This document shows positions 2,555-58,453 of a DNA stretch of 64,000 nt, in pieces; positions within the stretch are counted from its first letter, which is position 1; each line of letters begins with the position of its first letter. The notes under the pieces were generated by a model, which saw only the letters and a program-made list of their open reading frames with translations, made no database searches and was not told the DNA's origin. Position numbers and translations under genes: made by a program. Where the stretch lies: the NCBI RefSeq assembly GCF_021028975.2, contig NC_059427.1:135284001-135348000 (forward strand), read 5' to 3'. The stretch comes from Sphaerodactylus townsendi. Lineage: Eukaryota.

Positions 2555-2672
2555 CAGGGGTCTGCAACCTGTGGCTCTCCAGATGTTCATGGACTACAAT
2601 TCCCATGCAGGAAGGGGCTGATGGGAATTGTAGTCCATGAACATCTGGAGAGCCACAGGTTGCAGACCCTTG
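2555..2672. mobile_element. hAT (Charlie-like) palindromic MITE
   Basis: Near-perfect 118-bp fold-back with CAGGGGTCTGCAACC termini and a perfect 8-bp TSD TTCTAGAC (2547-2554 and 2673-2680). Confidence 0.9.
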
Positions 2673-6591: not shown

Positions 6592-6770
6592 GAATTTTTT
6601 GGCATCAAGTCACGGCTGACTATGGCAATTCCATGGGGTTTTCAAGGGAAGAGACCTTCAGAAGTGGTTTGCCACTGCCTGCCTTGGAGGTATTCTTTGG
6701 AGGTTTCCCATCCAAATACTTGGCCAGAGCTGACCCTGCTTAGCTTCTGAGATCTGATGAGATCAAGCTA
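6592..6770 (-). mobile_element. 5S rRNA-derived SINE (5S-Sauria-like)
   Basis: Reverse complement contains GATCTCATCAGATCTCAGAAGCTAAGCAGGGTCAG...AGTATTTGGATGGGA (5S box A/C region), followed by a Sauria/BovB-like tail. Confidence 0.8.
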
Positions 6771-7039
6771 ACAAGACAGAATATTAAAGTCAAATATTGT
6801 TTCACTGTTAAACGGTCATACATATTCATATTCATATATTAAATAAAAAGAGGGATTTACATAACTTTGGAGCTGCATGGGGAATAGTCCAAAGTTATGC
6901 AAATAACTTTTCATTGGTGGCTCTTTAGGGAAAAGGGAGATGGAGCAGAAGTGCTCCTCCTCTACTCATCCCTTCTGTCATCAGCAAAATCAGGTTCTCA
7001 AGCTTTTAAAGCAACATAGCCAACTGGACACTCAGGAGG

Positions 7040-7481
7040 TAAGGAAAGGGAGAGCTCAGGAAATATCCTTTTTGCAGTCCTCTGCACTTCGCCTAATGGT
7101 TTGACAGCCTCCCACCAACTGTCCGGGCCCTGCGGGACCTTGGTGAGTTCCGCAGGGCCTGTAAGACTGTGTTGTTCCACCGGGCCTTTGGAGTGTCCAG
7201 CCGCTGATATGGTGCCCCCCCACTGCTCCTGCTTTGGCACTGGTACAACAGAGCTCCTCATATTGAGGGGCCTGCCGTCCCCCCCTTCTTGGGGTGGGTT
7301 TTTAAATCGAGCCTCTTGTTTAATTTGCTAATTGTTAGCCGCTGTTTTTATGTATTTTAAGATGTTTTATTGACGGAGCCTATGTTTGTATTTTACCGGA
7401 TTTGCTCCTTTTTATTGTTTATATATTATGTTGTTCACCGCCCGGAGCCCTTTGGGGATCGGGCGGTATAGAAATTGAATA

Positions 7482-7566
<85 letters not shown>
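7040..7566 (+). mobile_element. LINE (L2-like) 3' end with a long (AAT)n tail
   Basis: Terminal stem-loop CACCGCCCGGAGCCCTTTGGGGATCGGGCGGTATA followed by an AAT microsatellite. 5' boundary approximate. Confidence 0.65.
7484..7566 (+). repeat. (AAT)n microsatellite
   Basis: Pure trinucleotide run of about 80 bp. Confidence 0.97.
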
Positions 7567-25528: not shown

Positions 25529-26130
25529 CAGTGGCGAAGCTCCCAGGGGGATGGGGGGGGGGGTTGCCATGCAACAGGTGCACGGATTTGGGTCACACGG
25601 GGGGTGCAAAATCCCCCCAGCCCCTCACCCTTCCCCCGCAGCCCCACTTGTGGCGCCCCCCCCCGCGAAATGTAGTTCCCACCAGAACAGGAAGGCCTGT
25701 TCTCCAGCCTGCTTGGTTTCCTAAAGTAAGTGTGGGGGGGTGTCGTGATTCCCTACGGTAAAAGCTTCTCATTTCTGGCTTTAGAAACCGGAAAGAGGGC
25801 TAGAGAACAGGCCTTCCTGTTCTGGTGGGAACTACATTTCCCAGGGTCTCCTGGGAAATGTAGTTCCCACACAGGTAGGCCTGTTCTGCAGCCTACTCGG
25901 TTTCCTAAAGTAAGTGTAGGGGGCGCGCGGGGAGAGGGCACCATGGGGGCAGGTGGGCAAGCGTGATTTCCTCCCCATACACACTTACTTTAGGAAACCA
26001 AGCAGGCTGGAGAATAGGCCTCCAGCCTGCTCAGTTCCCTAAAGTAAGTGGTGGTGGTTGGTGGTTAGTAGTGGTGGTGAGAGCCGCGGGGGAGGGGGCG
26101 CGCAAAAAAGCCAGCCCAGCTACGCCTCTG
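25529..26130. mobile_element. hAT-like non-autonomous transposon with internal repeats
   Basis: TIRs CAGTGGCGAAGCT / AGCTACGCCTCTG, 8-bp TSD GCTTGGCA / GCTTAGCA, and internal GGTTTCCTAAAGTAAGTGT repeated in both orientations. Confidence 0.82.
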
Positions 26131-41600: not shown

Positions 41601-42250
41601 ATTCGTGCAGAAACCAAACAATCTCTTGTGAAAACTAGAGCCCGGATAATCACTATCAAATCATTCCAACCAATGAGTCTCCTGTCTTCGGTGTTAGAAG
41701 ATACCTACCAATCCAACTGGCAGTTAAAAATTCTTCACATTATCAGATCCATTGGAATGGACCTTGACCTCTTCATTCAATCTGACCAGCCTAGTCTATT
41801 AAGGACAATAACGTAAAGAATTTGTGATAATGAGATAGCAGCATTATTCCCGTATGAATAAAAAATTTGTTCCCCCCAATGTTTAGATATCAATTTTTCT
41901 TGGGCCAAGAGGTAAAACCCTTTCAGCCCAGTCCAAATTGGGGGGGGGGGGGGGCATAATCAGTCACAGGAGCTGGTGGAAGCCGTGACAGCGCATTTGC
42001 CTTCTCCACCACTGCAAAGAGCTCTCATGCCAATGGAGGGGCCAGAGACACCAGCAGCCGGCCACCCCAGTCTTGCCACAACAAAAGCTCGATGTCCCAG
42101 CCATGCCAGTGGGTGGGTGAGTGTGGGGAGAGCTAGTCAGAGTCGATATTAGTTGACTTCCACCCTGGATTTGCAGCCAGTTGCGATGCAGCTCAAGCCC
42201 TGTACATAAGTCACTCTTTTGAGTGGCATAAGTTCATTGGCCCTATGGAG

Positions 42251-43791
42251 TTAGTCAGTCAGTTTTATTACGGCCATTAGGCCAGCAAAAAAGAATAGAG
42301 AAGAACAAGAAAGAGGAAGAACAATAAACAAAAGAAAAAACTGAATTTGTACAGAAATCCACACAAAGAATATAATCAGCTTGTAGCATTATTACGGTCA
42401 CCCTCATGTGGTCTGGCTCTTGGTCCCAACATGATTCTTCTCTTACTATATGCCACCATACAAAATTTAGCTACCTGCTGAGATATAAGAGAAACTCGGT
42501 CTTCCAGCAAAATTCTCACAAGAACTGAATCGGGATTAACTCTAGTTAAATTTCTGTACTGGATAAACAATGGATGAATTAAAGCCTCCCTTTCCCCTTT
42601 ATGGAGTTCACAATGCAATAAAATATGTAATACAGAGTCCACTTCCTGAGTTCTGCAAACACATAGTCTCCTATGTCGTGGAATTTTTTTGAGAATCTGC
42701 CCATTAGGATTGGCTGGATGGAAAAGCATCAAAAGCGGGCCCTGGAAAAGGCCCCAGTGGCATTCAGTAGATGTTATATATTGGACAGGTAAGGGGCAGC
42801 CGAGATACCTGTCCAAGATTCTTTTAATAGGTTTATATAACACCGGGTAACAAGGGGAAATCTGTTTTGCATTTCAAATGTCATTGAGCCGCTGATAGAT
42901 CTAAAGGCTGTTGCTCTGCAATGATCCAGTTCCAATAGTTGTACAGGATCCAAAGCTGCTACACGGTGTAAGTTTAAGTGTTATTTTTTTTCTAGCCAGC
43001 TTGGATATGGATTGTTGCTGCCAGTAGCAAAGGCAATAAGCCCATGGGGTGGAGAAAGGACTTTAAGCCAGCATTGTTGATAATAGAAGCTAGCCTCCAA
43101 AAGGTTGTCTCCGGGAATTTTTAACCAACCCCTGCTTCTTGTCTTAGAACTACATTAGCTGTACATTTAGGAGTGTTAAAAAGAGCTCTAAGGAATGTGG
43201 ACAGGACTCTCTCTAATAGAGTGAAATCCGAAATTATTGCCAATGGGGCTCCATAGGTGAGTTGTGCCAGGGATTTAGCTTCAAATAATCTAATTGCCTC
43301 TGGAATAAATCCCCCCCCCTTGTGGGACTGTAAAAAATATCTTAGGATTGCCTGTGAACTCCTTTGTGCTGTGTGTATGGCTGTTTGTATATGGGCTGAG
43401 GGTTTTCCGTTGTACTGGAAAACCACACCTAGGTATTTGAAACACTTTATGTGTTCAATCTGATGACCTAACAACTGCCATTTCAGTTTCTTAAATTTGG
43501 CATTAAAATGCACTATCTTGGTCTTTGCGTAGTTGATACTTAGCTGTTCCTCTGTGCATATCTGAGCAAATATCTTCAGCTCTCTTTTTAGCCCCACTTT
43601 CGTCAATGATAATACAACAGCATCATCGGCATACATGAGAATGGCTATACTCTTATCAGCGGTAAGGATAGGTGCATGAGTATCTTTCTTATGAAACCCT
43701 GTTATTAATGTGTTAACATAAAAGTTAAACAAATGGGGTGGTAGAAGGCACCCTTGCCTTACACCTTTCTGAGTAGAGATGGGCGCCGTTA
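42251..43791 (-). mobile_element. 5'-truncated non-LTR retrotransposon (RTE-X-like) with RT and C-terminal CCHC, inserted into a MITE spanning about 41925-43935
   Basis: GVRQGCLLPPHLFNFYVN...ILMYADDAV...FKYLGV RT motifs, RLCVC...HILLHC knuckle, AATAAA plus (CTGA)n tail, and a perfect 12-bp TSD GGCCCTATGGAG (42239-42250, 43792-43803). Clade assignment tentative. Confidence 0.88.
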
Positions 43792-47690: not shown

Positions 47691-48444
47691 GGGCAAATCC
47701 TCACTGAAAAAATAAACTTGTTTCCCCCTGGTTCAATAAGATACAGCACCTTTTTATTGTGGTTTCTCCCTCCCCACCGCAGCGTGAGTCTATAGAGGGG
47801 TTCGAAGTTAATCCCGGTATCAAACAATGCAAATTTGTTACAAATCCACAATCTGCTCTGCAGTTCTTTTGTTCTTTGTTCTGATTGGCTGTTGTGTTGT
47901 GGCGGGAACAATACCCCTACCCTTTGCTTGTTTTTTAAAAAATTACGCAGGTAGTCTTTTTTACCTCATGCCAGCCATGGCGACTCCCGTCATTGCTACG
48001 AATGTGCACGCTTGCTCCCCCTCTCTTTGCAGGAGTGTNNNNNNNNNNNNNNNNNNNNNNNNNNNNNNNNNNNNNNNNNNNNNNNNNNNNNNNNNNNNNN
48101 NNNNNNNNNNNNNNNNNNNNNNNNNNNNNNNNNNNNNNNNNNNNNNNNNNNNNNNNNNNNNNNNNNNCAGCCCACTGTGCTCTGATTGGCTGGAATGTTT
48201 CACATCATTCCCTAGGGCAGGAAAAATAAACCGATTGTTTTCCCTGTGTCTCCCCATCAATCCGGCCTTGGCCTGTGTTTTTCAAAAAGTTGCACCTTCC
48301 TGCCAGTTTTTTAAAAAAATGCGGGATGAGGGGGAGAGCACTTGCTGCGGTGGGGATGGAGCCGAGTTAGGCACTGAGGCCAGGGGGACTCCTTGCCCCA
48401 GCCGGGATTTTAATCATGTCACGGGATTTTGGGGGGAATCGCCC
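47691..48444. mobile_element. Harbinger-like element spanning the assembly gap, inserted next to an L2 RT remnant (CHQYADDTQ at about 47661-47687)
   Basis: GGGCAAATCCTCAC / GGGGGAATCGCCC termini with TCA / TGA flanks, and internal repeated TCTGATTGGCT. Confidence 0.6.
48039..48167. other. Assembly gap (N run)
   Basis: 129 consecutive N. Confidence 1.
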
Positions 48445-49269
48445 TGATGTTCTTCAGGAACTGCTGCACTGGTCCTGATCATGAACTAGTGCCTGAACAG
48501 AACTCAAACTAAATCTGGAGAAGCTGGAGGTACTACTATTAGAGAACTCTTATAATACACAGATGTAAGTGTAATATACTTGGGCTTGATAGGGTAATCA
48601 CTGCCCAATCAGAACAAGCTGATGTCATCGTGGATGCAGACTTACTCTTTAATAGGCAGGTAACTGGTCTCTATGGTAGCTTTTCACCAGTGATATGTGT
48701 TGTGAATACTGCAATCCTCTTTGGAGCATGGGAGGGATTGATTACTGTAATGGACTCTACATGGGGTACTCTTGAAGACAACTTGGAAGCTTCATTTATA
48801 AAATTCTGCAGTCAGAAATCTGTGAAATGTCAAGATAATAAGGCTTTGTCAGTTAATTGCCTGCCAGTTCCCTTCTGTGCCCCATTCAAGCTGGTTTAGC
48901 CTGGAGACATGGGTTCTGCTTTTCTATCACTGGGTTCCACTTCTGGTTTTGAAGAATGACACATCTACACCACTTCCCCTGACCCCACATAGCTTCACCC
49001 CTTTGATGCTATTGGCAATGCATGGGTACCAGATGATAGCTTTTCAGGGACTGGCATGAGTGCAGGTGGCCAAGGCAATAGTTCTTGATAGAACAATAAT
49101 GGTTCTTGAGAAACTGTTGGTCATATGTTCACAAGAAACAACATTTAAAACTGTGACCAACCCGATCTTCAAATTATTATTTCCAGAAAGAATTTCAATT
49201 CCAAAATCCTGAAAATCAGAAGACTTTCCTTTGATTCAACACTGAAATCCTGGTTGAAGCTACTTACTT

Positions 49270-49402
49270 TATTATTTATTTATTTATTTATTTATTTGTT
49301 TGTTTCACTTTTATACCGCCCTCCCCCAGGGGGCTCAGGGCGGTTCACATCATAATACAGCAAGTGAATAACAAAATAAAATACTAAAACTTCATAATAG
49401 TT
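49270..49402 (-). mobile_element. Short L2-like LINE 3' end with a (TAAA)n tail
   Basis: Minus strand reads TGTGAACCGCCCTGAGCCCCCTGGGGGAGGGCGGTATAAAAG...(TAAA)n, the same terminal stem-loop type as 7436-7470. Confidence 0.75.
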
Positions 49403-49461
49403 GTAAAGAAGGCTCTGCTGCACCTACATGATGGGCCAGGGCTGGCAGCTAAAAGCTCCAA
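49403..49461 (-). repeat. Exact inverted duplicate of MAP2K6 5'UTR segment 50077-50135
   Basis: 59/59 reverse-complement identity read directly from the sequence. Confidence 0.95.
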
Positions 49462-50067
49462 TATTAAATATTGATTAACAGCCCCCTGAAGGATTGCAAT
49501 TGATTTGCTAATTTTAATGTGTTGATTTGCTAATTTTAAAATGCACAAGTCACATTAATGCAGTTCCAATGGCGATCTCAGATAAGAATCTCCATGTTTA
49601 ATGGCAATTCATTATACTTCAATCTGATTACGAAAGACTAGGGGGTAAGGGTTTGCCTAAATCGTCAATATCCCTTACTTATGAGGATTGCTGGATGCAG
49701 AGGATTACATAGACAACAGTACAGAACGGTTATTCATACGTTATTATGAAACTGTAAACAGGTAGAAAATATGTACTGCAACGTGCTGATATACACACTA
49801 TGTAATGATTCTCAGAAGCTCTGGACTACAAAATAAATGATGAGCTGCCGTTTTCATTTCCTACTTACCTTTTTCATATGATCTAAGATTTATCTCTTCA
49901 CCCCAACACACATAACACCTGTATCTTATTATTATTATTTTGAAAATTCAGAGCATAGAGCCAAGGAACCTTCTTAATGAAATACTCCGTGGAAATCCGA
50001 ACGAACTACATTACCCAGAAATCATAGCTCTGGTCGTAGAAAGAACGTCTGCGCACTGAGACACTCT

Positions 50068-50352
50068 GTTCCAAGTTTGGAGCTTTTAGCTGCCAGCCCT
50101 GGCCCATCATGTAGGTGCAGCAGAGCCTTCTTTACCATTGCAATAACGGGGGGACCCACTTTGCAATCTGTTTTGCAAGGTGTGCAATTGCAGCTCTTTC
50201 CTTTGCAAGGAGCTCTGGTGTAGGAAGTAAGAAAAACTCCAGTTGCATGAAGATTGAGAGCTTGCAGTTTGCATCTTTGTTGCAAAACTAGCTACTGAAG
50301 AGAGAAGGCAAAGTCTTTTGTGCTCCCCTCCCCCATCAAAGCAGAGGGGAAA
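50068..50352 (+). promoter_or_regulatory. MAP2K6: MAP2K6 5'UTR (exon 1), containing two uORFs (50109-50114 and 50247-50291)
   Basis: Begins GTTCCAAGTTTGGAGCTTTTAGCTGCCAGCCCTGGCCCATCATGTAG, matching the recalled human MAP2K6 mRNA 5' end. TSS inferred from that similarity only. Confidence 0.85.
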
Positions 50353-50368
50353 ATGTCTCAGCAAAGAG
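50353..50368 (+). CDS. MAP2K6: MAP2K6 (MKK6) exon 1 coding part: ATG TCT CAG CAA AGA G|gtaagg (MSQQR-G); exon 2 not found in the window
   Basis: 16-nt coding stub with a strong donor, preceded by a leader very similar to the recalled human MAP2K6 5'UTR (...GTCTTTTGTGCTCCCCTCCCCCATCAAAG...GGGGAAAATGTCTCAG). Syntenic with ABCA5. Confidence 0.92.
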
Positions 50369-52407
50369 GTAAGGCTTCGACTTATGTTCCTTGCAAATAT
50401 GCAAAAAGTCGTTCATGCATTTTGGAATTGCATGCATGCAATTTTCGGGATGCAATTGCATTTTGAAGTTTGAGGCTTTGAATAGCTCTCAGTTGCATTT
50501 CCTGTTTAATATGTGCCTTTTTTTGCAGGCACACACACAGTCGCGCGCGCACACAAACGCACACACAGTTCCTGTAAGGCAGGGCTTGCAGTTCAGCTGT
50601 GCATTGACGTTGTTTGCATTCTTCTCCTGGGATTACTGAGCTCTTTTTGCCTTTTGCACAATCAGAACAGATAAAGGGTATTGGGAACCCTATGCATGAG
50701 TCGCTTTATACGTATGCACACAGCATACAAACGGTAAAATGCAGGCGAAACTGCAGACAGTTTATCGTGCAAATTTAAATCAAACTTTATGCAAAAAAGT
50801 ATCTGGTGCAAATGTACTGTGAAACTTGAGTGGAGTTACTAAGAATATATGCCTTTGTTTCCATGGGAAAGTATTGTTCTGGTGCCAGAGCTGAGCTCAT
50901 TTTCCACAGGCAGAACCCCCCCCCCCCCCGTCGCAGGCACTGAGTGTAGCTTTTATGGCGAGATTTACGAAAGTTATGCAAGGAAGTGGAGTTACATGCA
51001 CAAGCACAGATTTATTAGCTTTTTTGGTGTTTTGAATGGAATCAGATGAGATCTTTAAAAAAATACGGGAGAGGATTCTATTTAAGGGTGTCAAGACAAT
51101 AAAATCTTGCAAACGGGAAATGATAATATTTGGGGTCCCTTGCAAAACCTGAAGAGTAGCCTACAGCGTCCATTCAAACTTTAGAGAGGCATTGGTTAGA
51201 AACCAGTGCAACTATCCTGTGTCTTTCTGAATGCATCCTCTGAAGGGTACGTTCATGATCCCGATGCAATTTTGTGAATTTACAGTTTTCTCTATTAAGG
51301 CAACCCCTTGCTCCTTATGCAATATGTAGGCTGCAGAGGAGTGGTGGTAGGAAGAATTTGGGATTGTGTGCACGGTGCTGCAGGATGCATTTAGGGAAAC
51401 CACTTGTAGGAGTTTCAATGCAGAAATTAGGAGGAGAGGGATACAGTTACAGTTATGCAGAAGACCAGAGGCGATAAGCAGAACTGTCCAATACGCTGAA
51501 TGGCAGCGTATTACTGCAAACCTCGAAGAACGCACACTTGCATTTTGTGGCAGTTGAATTGCATAATTTATTCTCCATTTGCTGCAGTCATTTCTCCCAG
51601 CCAATTGGAAGGTGATTGGAAGCTCCCAGCGGAAAGAGGCCAGTCAGTTTTGCCAACCTCGAAAAAGGATGCCTACAAAATGTGGCACGCACTTGAGGCT
51701 TCTCATCCAACATGTTCAGCTTTAGTAAGAGGCCAAGAGGGGAATCCGTCATTTAGTAATTGGAGGAGGGAAGAAGAAACAAGAGTGAACCCCCACCCCA
51801 TGAAACATAAATGATTATGGCTCCTTTTTTTCCAGCAAAAAGCTTTCTGTTCTCCCCAGGATTTGCCTCAATCAAATAAAAAGAGCCCCCAGTATAGAGG
51901 TTACAGTTTCTTTTATATCAAATCCAAATTTGTTTACCTTCTTGCAGAGCTCCAGGTAGGAAAAAAAAAGGGGGGGGGGATTAGCTACCTCACAGTTTCC
52001 AAGAGTGGTTCCTTTCTTGTTTCCTGTCCATTCTGACCTATTTCACCCTCAGTGTTTTCAGTATTCGAGTTAGGTGTTAATTAAAGGCATTACATGAAAT
52101 TGCATTTTTGCAATATGTTTCAATAGATGCTTAAATATAGGATCTTGTTTTCATCCGGTGTTTTAGAACACAGACCAGGCCAGTGGCGGTTCTACAGGCA
52201 CCAAAAGATCTTTTTTTAAAAAAAAGAGAGGAAAAAAGGAAATGTTATGTCAGTGGTGCATACCAATGCTGAGATTCATGTTGTATTATTTTGTGGTGTT
52301 GACAAAATGTGCAGAACGCTTTCAATTAATTTAAGTAAAAGACAATCCCTGCCCCAAGGATCTTGCAGTTTAAATTTAGAAGGATGGGGATGAACAACAG
52401 AGACAGT

Positions 52408-57678: not shown

Positions 57679-58453
57679 CCGTATATATTCGCGGATAAGT
57701 TGAGTTTTTCAGCCCTTTTTTAAGGCTGAAAAATGCCCCCCTCGACTTATATGCGAGTCAGTGATTCCCCCTGCAATGCCCCCCCCCCCATTTACTTTAA
57801 CAAACGGAGCAGGCTTCAGAAGAGGCCTGCTGCCTGTGTTCTTTTCCCAGCTGAAATGGCCTGCTGGGAACTACATTTCCCAGGAGACCCTGGGAAATGT
57901 AGTTCCCATCAAGTCATTTGACGCCTGGAAGGGAACACAGGTAGCAGGCCTCTTTTCAAGTCTCCTCCGTTTGTTAAAGTAACTGCGGGGAGGGGAGAAT
58001 GGGGGGGCAGGGGGCGCCGAGCAGGGAACACCCTCTGCTCCAGGGAAAAGGTGGCTGCCTTCTCCCTGGGGCAGAGGGGGAAGGGCAGCGGCGCCCTGCT
58101 CTCTGGGGAAGAGGGGGAATGGCGGGGGCACCCTGCTTTGTGCAGGGAACCCCCTCTGCGGCTGCCTTCTCCCTGGGCAAAGGGGGAATGGCGGTGGTGC
58201 CCTTCTCTGTGCCACCGGCTCTCGCGCTGCGGGAGCCGGTGGTGCCAAGCAGGGAACCCCCTCTACCCCAGGGAAAAGGTGGCTGCCTTCTCCCTGGGGC
58301 AGAGGAGGAATGGCAGCAGCGCCCTGCTCTGTGCCACTGGCTTCATTTCCCACCCTCGACTTATACACGAGTCAATAAGTTTTCCCAGTTTTTTGTGTTA
58401 AAACTAGGTGCCTCAACTTCTACTCGGGTCGACTTATACACGAGTATATACGG
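57679..58453. mobile_element. Tc1/mariner-superfamily non-autonomous element with GC-rich internal tandem repeats
   Basis: TA-flanked TIRs CCGTATATATTCGCGGATAAG / CTTATACACGAGTATATACGG, and internal repeats of GCAGGGAACCCCCTCT...GCTGCCTTCTCCCTGGG. Confidence 0.85.

What the first reader, a model, noticed from the sequence alone, without database searches (positions are those of the whole stretch)
49270..50135. Chimeric insertion: 59 nt of the MAP2K6 5'UTR captured in inverted orientation on a LINE 3' end, about 620 bp upstream of its source
Seen: 49403-49461 is the exact reverse complement of 50077-50135 and abuts an L2-like 3' end. The minus strand therefore reads [MAP2K6 leader 59 nt]-[LINE 3' end]-(TAAA)n. 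The captured piece starts only about 9 nt from the inferred TSS and includes the ATG-TAG start-stop uORF. Known: LINE reverse transcriptases template-switch to other RNAs during target-primed reverse transcription (for example U6-L1 chimeras). Inference: the RT jumped onto the neighbouring nascent MAP2K6 transcript and copied it almost to the cap; local DNA-templated repair is the alternative. Zero mismatches implies a recent event. The inverted repeat brackets the core promoter, so any upstream-initiated transcript would form a 59-bp stem over the leader, and a divergent transcript would carry a decoy copy of the UTR.
Basis: partly seen in the sequence, partly recalled or inferred. Interest (0 to 1): 0.78.

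Follow-up and report, generated by a model that had tools for sequence, protein, structure and literature searches.

The report
Retroposon junction with copied promoter-side filler
A truncated jumping-gene copy in a lizard genome carries at its inner end an exact 59-base inverted copy of sequence 615 bases away, next to a gene's putative first exon; this is most likely a by-product of how the insertion was sealed, a kind of event already described, and whether the copy came from DNA or from the gene's RNA could not be tested.

Summary
The sequence observation holds. Window 49403-49461 is the exact reverse complement of 50077-50135: 59 nt, 615 nt apart, none expected by chance, sharply bounded. 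The left arm abuts the 5'-truncated end of a minus-strand retroposon that has a 3' stem-loop and a (CAAA)2(TAAA)5 tail. A candidate 5-bp target duplication (TATTA) encloses tail, element and 59-mer together.

Three labels are unverified: "L2-like", "MAP2K6 5'UTR" and "9 nt from the TSS".

My reading is one retroposition event whose 5' junction holds a long filler copied from nearby sequence. L2-clade LINEs often carry flank-templated 5' extra nucleotides and make about 5-bp duplications. L1 insertions with locally templated DNA and inverted duplications are also published. Geometry fits both, and the transcription start is unknown.

An assembly artefact and two independent events therefore remain untested.

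The scan found like cases elsewhere in this genome, for example a 45-nt inverted filler copied from 723 nt away (s1-760018). Interest is moderate to low: a new member of a known kind.

The parts
49270..49274 (.). Left copy of the candidate 5-bp target-site duplication (TATTA)
   Evidence: It matches 49462-49466 and is the only occurrence in the tail boundary zone. The 5-mer is common locally (0.35% per position), so support is weak. The 5-bp length matches that reported for L2-clade ZfL2-1 (PMC4245944).
49275..49302 (-). Microsatellite tail, (CAAA)2(TAAA)5 when read on the minus strand
   Evidence: Read directly. The units are nearly pure, which suggests a young insertion.
49303..49402 (-). 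5'-truncated retroposon 3' region (stringent-type LINE or SINE tail) with a stem-loop at 49316-49343
   Evidence: Fold energy is -33.4 kcal/mol, z = -3.28, and no shuffle folds as well. A diverged relative lies at about 7424-7513 and extends to about 7150. The family was not named.
49403..49461 (-). Derived 59-nt copy (left arm). Read on the minus strand, it equals the + strand of 50077-50135.
   Evidence: Searches show exact identity and sharp ends. Calling this arm the copy is an inference from its position at a retroposon break.
49462..49466 (.). Right copy of the candidate TSD (TATTA)
49467..50076 (+). Spacer: unique sequence that includes the presumed core promoter of the downstream gene
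   Evidence: No other copy exists in the window. There is no CpG island; CpG observed/expected is 0.4-0.7. An ACTAYRNNNCCCR motif lies at 50005, but the same motif also occurs in palindromic repeats elsewhere in the window.
50077..50135 (+). Presumed source segment (right arm), in the presumed leader of the gene. It contains ATG-TAG at 50109-50114.
   Evidence: That it is transcribed is inferred, not shown.
50136..50368 (+). Rest of the putative first exon: ATG at 50353, MSQQR, and a GT donor at 50369
   Evidence: Identity as MAP2K6 was not verified.

Best explanation
This is a single retroposition event. A stringent-type non-LTR retroposon RNA (3' stem-loop plus a (TAAA)n tail; LINE or its SINE partner) was reverse-transcribed at a nick in an AT-rich site about 0.8 kb upstream of the gene's putative start codon. 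Synthesis stopped about 100 nt into the element.

Before the 5' end was joined to the other side of the break, a polymerase copied 59 nt from local DNA 615 nt away. Two routes are possible. The 3' overhang of the reciprocal end could have folded back on its own resected strand. Or the RT or a host repair polymerase could have jumped to the exposed strand. The product was then ligated. The result is a long, flank-templated '5' extra' segment that now forms a perfect inverted repeat around the promoter region.

Shown: the exact repeat, its sharp ends, its position at the truncation point, the orientation, and the candidate 5-bp TSD.

Inferred: that it was one event, which arm is the copy, and that the template was DNA.

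Most likely it has no function.
For: -
- The candidate 5-bp TSD enclosing tail, element and 59-mer matches the roughly 5-bp TSDs of L2-clade ZfL2-1 (PMC4245944).
- About 40-50% of L2-clade inserts carry 5' extra nucleotides. A large share of these are templated from flanking genomic or LINE DNA (PMC4245944, PMC4760211, PMC2666801).
[quoted passage not shown] Inverted duplications were attributed to processing of the reciprocal end (PMC11702581).
- A DNA template needs no special RNA species and no coincidence with the TSS.
- The best initiator-like match (A at 50055) lies 22 nt upstream of the arm, so the copy need not reach a cap.
- The scan's followed-up note s1-760018 describes a 45-nt filler copied inverted from host DNA 723 nt away at another retroelement junction in this genome. 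Its size and distance are similar (unchecked by me).
Against: - No microhomology is visible on the source side of either junction. The bases flanking the source differ from those flanking the copy at the first position on both sides. Snap-back or annealing-mediated synthesis usually leaves some microhomology.
- Published 5' extras are 'several nucleotides' copied from the immediate flank. Here the filler is 59 nt from 615 nt away.
- The copy is in the sense orientation of the downstream gene and lies in the zone where its TSS is expected. The RNA model predicts this; the DNA model does not.
- There is no read or cross-species evidence for any step.
Confidence: 0.42

Rival explanations
1. One reading: RNA template switch. 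During target-primed reverse transcription the RT left the retroposon RNA. It continued on an RNA of the adjacent gene, either a nascent transcript or a released short capped promoter-proximal RNA. It copied from position 50135 back to the RNA's 5' end at or near 50077, and the run-off end was joined directly to the target.
For: - The two parts are in the same (sense) orientation, as template switching requires (10.1101/2025.02.02.635956; PMC4476161).
- The segment lies in the presumed leader, upstream of ATG 50353.
- Both junctions are clean with no visible microhomology, and the candidate TSD is intact. Direct joining of run-off, full-length cDNAs has these features (PMC4245944, PMC11702581).
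- Chimeric retrocopies with cellular RNAs are noted elsewhere in this genome (s1-753588, followed up).
Against: - The TSS is unknown. There is no TATA box and no initiator match at 50068-50077; the best match is at 50055.
- There is no extra G from a cap at the junction.
- The acceptor would have to be an RNA from the gene only 615 nt away. That calls for a proximity effect that has not been documented.
- The join is not at a splice site, so nothing marks the template as RNA.
- Gene identity and transcription of 50077-50135 were not shown.
Confidence: 0.3
2. Two independent events. A 59-nt inverted templated duplication (replication or repair template switch) and a retroposon insertion happen to abut.
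Against: - The arm starts exactly at the element's truncation point, with no base between them.
- No TSD-like match flanks the element alone, whereas TATTA flanks element plus arm.
Confidence: 0.08
3. Assembly artefact. The left arm, or its junctions, does not exist in the animal.
For: No read was laid on the junctions. Exact identity is also what an artefact would give.
Against: - Three runs from two samples of the closest organism hold 0.92-0.95 of the sampled 31-mers of 49000-50600, and other organisms hold 0.21-0.81. It cannot be said which words are missing.
- A 59-nt inverted patch placed precisely at a retroposon truncation point inside a plausible TSD is not a usual assembler error.
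Confidence: 0.06
4. Reverse polarity. The 59-mer belongs to the inserted retroposon RNA (its body or a transduced piece), and the copy at 50077-50135 is the derived one, patched into the leader by repair.
For: The diverged relative at about 7150-7300 has a GC-rich body upstream of its AT-rich 3' region, so a GC-rich 59-mer is not out of character for the family.
Against: - The arm has no match in that relative or anywhere else in the window.
- The right arm has no break hallmark beside it.
- The arm would need an internal deletion of the element to sit where it does.
Confidence: 0.06

Closest known systems
5' extra nucleotides (5' EX) of L2-clade LINE inserts, templated from flanking sequence (Kajikawa, Yamaguchi and Okada; PMC4245944, PMC4760211, PMC2666801)
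   Same: Extra bases sit between a 5'-truncated stringent-type retroposon and the target. They match nearby sequence. The TSD is about 5 bp.
   Different: Published extras are a few nucleotides from the immediate flank. Here the filler is 59 nt, inverted, from 615 nt away. Clade membership of this element is unproven.
Locally templated insertions and inverted duplications at human L1 integration sites (PMC11702581)
   Same: [quoted passage not shown] The authors attribute it to processing of the reciprocal DNA end.
   Different: That work used L1 with poly(A) in cultured human cells. Here the element is a non-L1 retroposon fixed in a lizard assembly, and no experimental evidence exists.
Chimeric retrocopies by RT template switching: U6/L1 and mRNA first-exon/L1 chimeras (PMC4476161; 10.1101/2025.02.02.635956)
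   Same: The 5' part is in the same orientation as a 5'-truncated retroposon 3' part, inside one TSD.
   Different: In known cases the 5' part comes from abundant RNAs or from first exons joined at splice sites, and from loci unrelated to the target. Here the source is 615 nt from the target, the join is internal to the exon, and an RNA origin is unproven.
Polymerase-theta or synthesis-dependent MMEJ snap-back templated insertions (own knowledge)
   Same: An inverted copy of sequence near a break is inserted at the repair junction.
   Different: These usually use templates within tens of bases and show priming microhomology. None is visible here.

Membership tests
Flank-templated 5' extra nucleotides of L2-clade LINE inserts | Extra bases lie exactly between the element's 5' (truncated) end and the target flank | tested here: met
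   The 59-mer occupies 49403-49461, between the element's end at 49402 and the flank at 49462.
Flank-templated 5' extra nucleotides of L2-clade LINE inserts | The extra bases match sequence flanking the insertion | tested here: met
   Identity is 100% to 50077-50135, inverted, 615 nt away. Both the distance and the length exceed what the papers describe.
Flank-templated 5' extra nucleotides of L2-clade LINE inserts | Target-site duplication of about 5 bp | tested here: inconclusive
   TATTA occurs at 49270-49274 and 49462-49466, but a 5-mer in AT-rich DNA is weak evidence. No empty site was available.
Flank-templated 5' extra nucleotides of L2-clade LINE inserts | The element belongs to the L2 clade | not testable with these tools
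   No repeat library was available, and no RT-coding copy with this tail lies in the window. The stem-loop plus tetranucleotide tail fits the stringent type (PMC3747384). The tail is unlike Bov-B (CAA)n or Sauria (ACCTTT)n (PMC13295347).
Chimeric retrocopy by RT template switch onto a cellular RNA | The 5' part is in the same orientation as the retroposon part | tested here: met
   The minus strand reads the + strand sequence of 50077-50135, then the element in sense. This assumes the gene is on the + strand, as ATG 50353 and the GT donor at 50369 suggest.
Chimeric retrocopy by RT template switch onto a cellular RNA | The 5' part is a copy of an RNA: it starts at that RNA's 5' end, or carries a splice junction or a cap-derived G | tested here: inconclusive
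   There is no splice junction in the piece and no extra G at the junction. Initiator-like matches are at 50017, 50055 and 50158.
Chimeric retrocopy by RT template switch onto a cellular RNA | Both parts arrived together (shared presence or absence in relatives) | not testable with these tools
Snap-back / MMEJ templated insertion | Microhomology at the priming junction between the break end and the template | tested here: not met
   The base before the copy differs from the base before the source. The same holds after the other end.

The most novel reading that the evidence does not exclude
The 59-mer is a cDNA of a short, capped, promoter-proximal RNA of the adjacent gene, released from a paused or prematurely terminated polymerase. 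A non-L1 LINE reverse transcriptase working 615 nt upstream would have captured it by an end-to-end template jump. Its two ends would then record a germline transcription start (about 50077) and a pause or termination site (about 50135). It would also show that stringent-type LINE enzymes can sample nascent host RNA at the insertion site.
Probability: 0.18. Interest if true: 0.7.

Novelty: new member of a known kind. Interest (0 to 1): 0.36.

Why it matters
- If the DNA reading is right, this is one more natural example, unusually long and clean, of how non-L1 retroposon insertions are sealed using nearby sequence. Its main use is as a data point for a genome-wide survey of 5' junctions in squamates.
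- If the RNA reading is right, it would be a rare natural record of a reverse transcriptase copying a local nascent transcript. It would mark a germline start site.
- Either way, the insertion left a perfect 59-bp inverted repeat bracketing a presumed promoter. That could matter for local stability or for any transcript spanning both arms. Nothing here shows such an effect.

Tried and rejected
**Reads and cross-species comparison**
So there was no read support, no empty site and no TSS mapping.
- Only local scripts and folds beside them were used.

**Gene identity**
- A motif scan of six-frame translations found no further MKK6-like exon in the window.

**Repeat family**
- Only one diverged relative lies in the window.
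- Rfam and tRNA scans of that copy gave nothing useful.
- A search of earlier findings by sequence was blank, which means nothing.
- The LINE fragment at about 42.2-43.6 kb has a different tail.

**Other checks**
- A longer, gapped inverted repeat was rejected.
- A CpG-island promoter was rejected: CpG observed/expected is 0.4-0.7.
- The ZNF143-like motif at 50005 was downgraded as a TSS anchor, because the same motif sits in palindromic repeats elsewhere in the window.
- The N run at 48039-48167 was left as it is.

Full report
**Observation**

The window holds an exact 59-nt inverted repeat. Its arms are at 49403-49461 and 50077-50135, 615 nt apart.
- With up to three mismatches allowed, these are the only two copies in 64 kb, and no shuffle produced any.
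- A gapped local alignment of the surroundings gives only the 59-nt block. The outer and inner flanks score 26 and 18, within the range of shuffled controls.
- The repeat therefore has sharp ends and is not the core of a longer, decayed inverted duplication.
- The spacer (49463-50076) and the sequence right of the right arm have no other copy in the window.

**What the left arm touches**

Read on the minus strand, the left arm is followed without any intervening base by three features:
- an AT-rich stretch;
- a GC stem-loop (49316-49343 on the + strand);
- a short A-rich linker and then (CAAA)2(TAAA)5.

This 141-nt stretch folds much better than shuffles (z = -3.28, none of 200 as good). A stem-loop followed by short tandem units is the usual 3' end of 'stringent-type' LINEs and their SINE partners (PMC3747384).

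One diverged relative lies at about 7150-7480. It has the same stem-loop and a long (ATA)n tail.

I could not name the family. The tail is unlike the (CAA)n of reptilian Bov-B or the (ACCTTT)n of Sauria SINEs (PMC13295347).

**Target-site duplication**

TATTA occurs immediately before the tail (49270-49274) and immediately after the 59-mer (49462-49466).
- It encloses tail, element and 59-mer as one unit.
- No comparable match encloses the element alone.
- Five bases in AT-rich DNA are weak evidence. However, 5 bp is the TSD length reported for the L2-clade element ZfL2-1 (PMC4245944).

**The gene side**

Downstream of the right arm lie an ATG at 50353, five codons (MSQQR) and a GT donor at 50369.
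- No further kinase-like exon is in the window, so I cannot confirm that the gene is MAP2K6.
- There is no CpG island and no TATA box.
- Initiator-like matches lie at 50017, 50055 and 50158, not at 50068-50077.
- An ACTAYRNNNCCCR motif at 50005 looks like a ZNF143-type promoter site (own knowledge). The same motif also sits in palindromic repeats at 2.6, 25.8 and 57.9 kb, so it is a poor anchor.
- The claim that the copied piece starts about 9 nt from the TSS is therefore unverified.

**What could not be done**

- The look-up of sequencing runs showed that 20 runs hold words of 49000-50600. The shares were 0.92-0.95 in three runs of the closest organism, then 0.81, 0.59, 0.44, 0.26 and 0.21 in others. 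Raw RNA reads of a close relative were also listed.
The tool says this is no evidence of anything.
- There is thus no read support for the junctions, no empty site in relatives, and no TSS. The N run at 48039-48167 was left alone.

**Mechanism: what the geometry allows**

The first-strand cDNA is the + strand, primed from the left flank and growing rightward. After position 49402 it continues as the complement of the + strand of 50135 down to 50077. Three templates give this product:
- the + DNA strand of that region, copied by the RT;
- the minus strand itself, copied by the 3' end of the reciprocal DNA end after folding back.

All three predict the orientation seen. Neither junction shows microhomology on the source side.

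**Mechanism: what is already known**

[quoted passage not shown] A large share of these are templated from the flanking genomic or LINE DNA (PMC4245944, PMC4760211, PMC2666801).
[quoted passage not shown] Inversions and inverted duplications were ascribed to processing of the reciprocal end. Template switching between RNAs was also seen (PMC11702581).
- Chimeras of L1 with cellular RNAs, including first exons in sense orientation, are catalogued (PMC4476161; 10.1101/2025.02.02.635956).
- Both candidate mechanisms therefore belong to known kinds.

**Weighing DNA against RNA**

For RNA:
- The copy is in the sense orientation.
- The source lies where a TSS is expected.
- The joints are clean and direct with an intact TSD, as for run-off cDNAs.

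For DNA:
- There is direct precedent for local templating.
- No special RNA is needed, and no proximity effect has to be assumed.
- There is no cap-derived G, and the best initiator match is 22 nt upstream.
- Parallels exist in this same genome. One followed-up note describes a 45-nt filler copied inverted from host DNA 723 nt away at a Penelope junction (s1-760018). Two first-reader notes describe a 32-nt inverted copy (s1-750897) and retroposon ends fused to nearby intron sequence (s1-746440, s1-743066). I did not check these notes.

I put the readings at:

| Reading | Confidence |
|---|---|
| Single event, DNA template | 0.42 |
| Single event, RNA template | 0.30 |
| Two independent events | 0.08 |
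| Assembly artefact | 0.06 |
| Reverse polarity | 0.06 |

**Age and function**

Zero differences in 2 x 59 nt bounds the age at about 11-32 My (95%) for rates of 2.4 to 0.8 x 10^-9 per site per year (the rates are from my own knowledge). The nearly pure tail also suggests youth.

Nothing indicates a function. A transcript crossing both arms would form a 59-bp duplex, and an upstream antisense transcript would carry the leader copy and meet AATAAA-like tail units. No such transcript was shown.

**Verdict**

The repeat is real and well observed in the assembly. It is most likely a long, locally templated filler at the 5' junction of a truncated retroposon. That makes it a new member of a known kind. 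The attractive RNA-capture reading remains open and is cheaply testable by TSS mapping and by the empty site in relatives.

Noticed in passing
window 50136-50520: The motif TTGCA(A/T) and its complement occur 20 times in 385 nt, against about 0.9 expected from the window average. The run spans the rest of the putative leader and the start of intron 1. It could be a cluster of C/EBP-like half sites or a low-complexity repeat.
   Followed up: partly
window 2593-2634, 25831-25864, 57870-57903 (also 20401): Short palindromic hairpins have arms that carry the ACTACA..TCCCAG motif. They look like a MITE-like or hairpin repeat family. The same motif occurs singly at 50005 in the presumed promoter.
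   Followed up: no
window 6677-6794 (-): A 5S rRNA-like sequence scores 37.3 bits, just under the Rfam gathering score of 38. It is probably a 5S pseudogene or a 5S-derived SINE head, next to the retroposon copy at about 7150-7480.
   Followed up: no
window about 7150-7560 (+): A longer, diverged relative of the retroposon 3' end has a GC-rich body, the same stem-loop and a long (ATA)n tail.
   Followed up: partly
window 49500-49539: An exact 18-nt unit is repeated at 22-nt spacing (a tandem duplication) just inside the spacer, 40 nt from the left arm (family D3).
   Followed up: no
window about 42250-43600 (-): A LINE fragment has a reverse-transcriptase YADD motif and a different 3' end, which finishes in ACTG-type units. 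It is not the family at the finding.
   Followed up: no
window 48039-48167: A run of 129 N lies 1.1 kb upstream of the finding.
   Followed up: no
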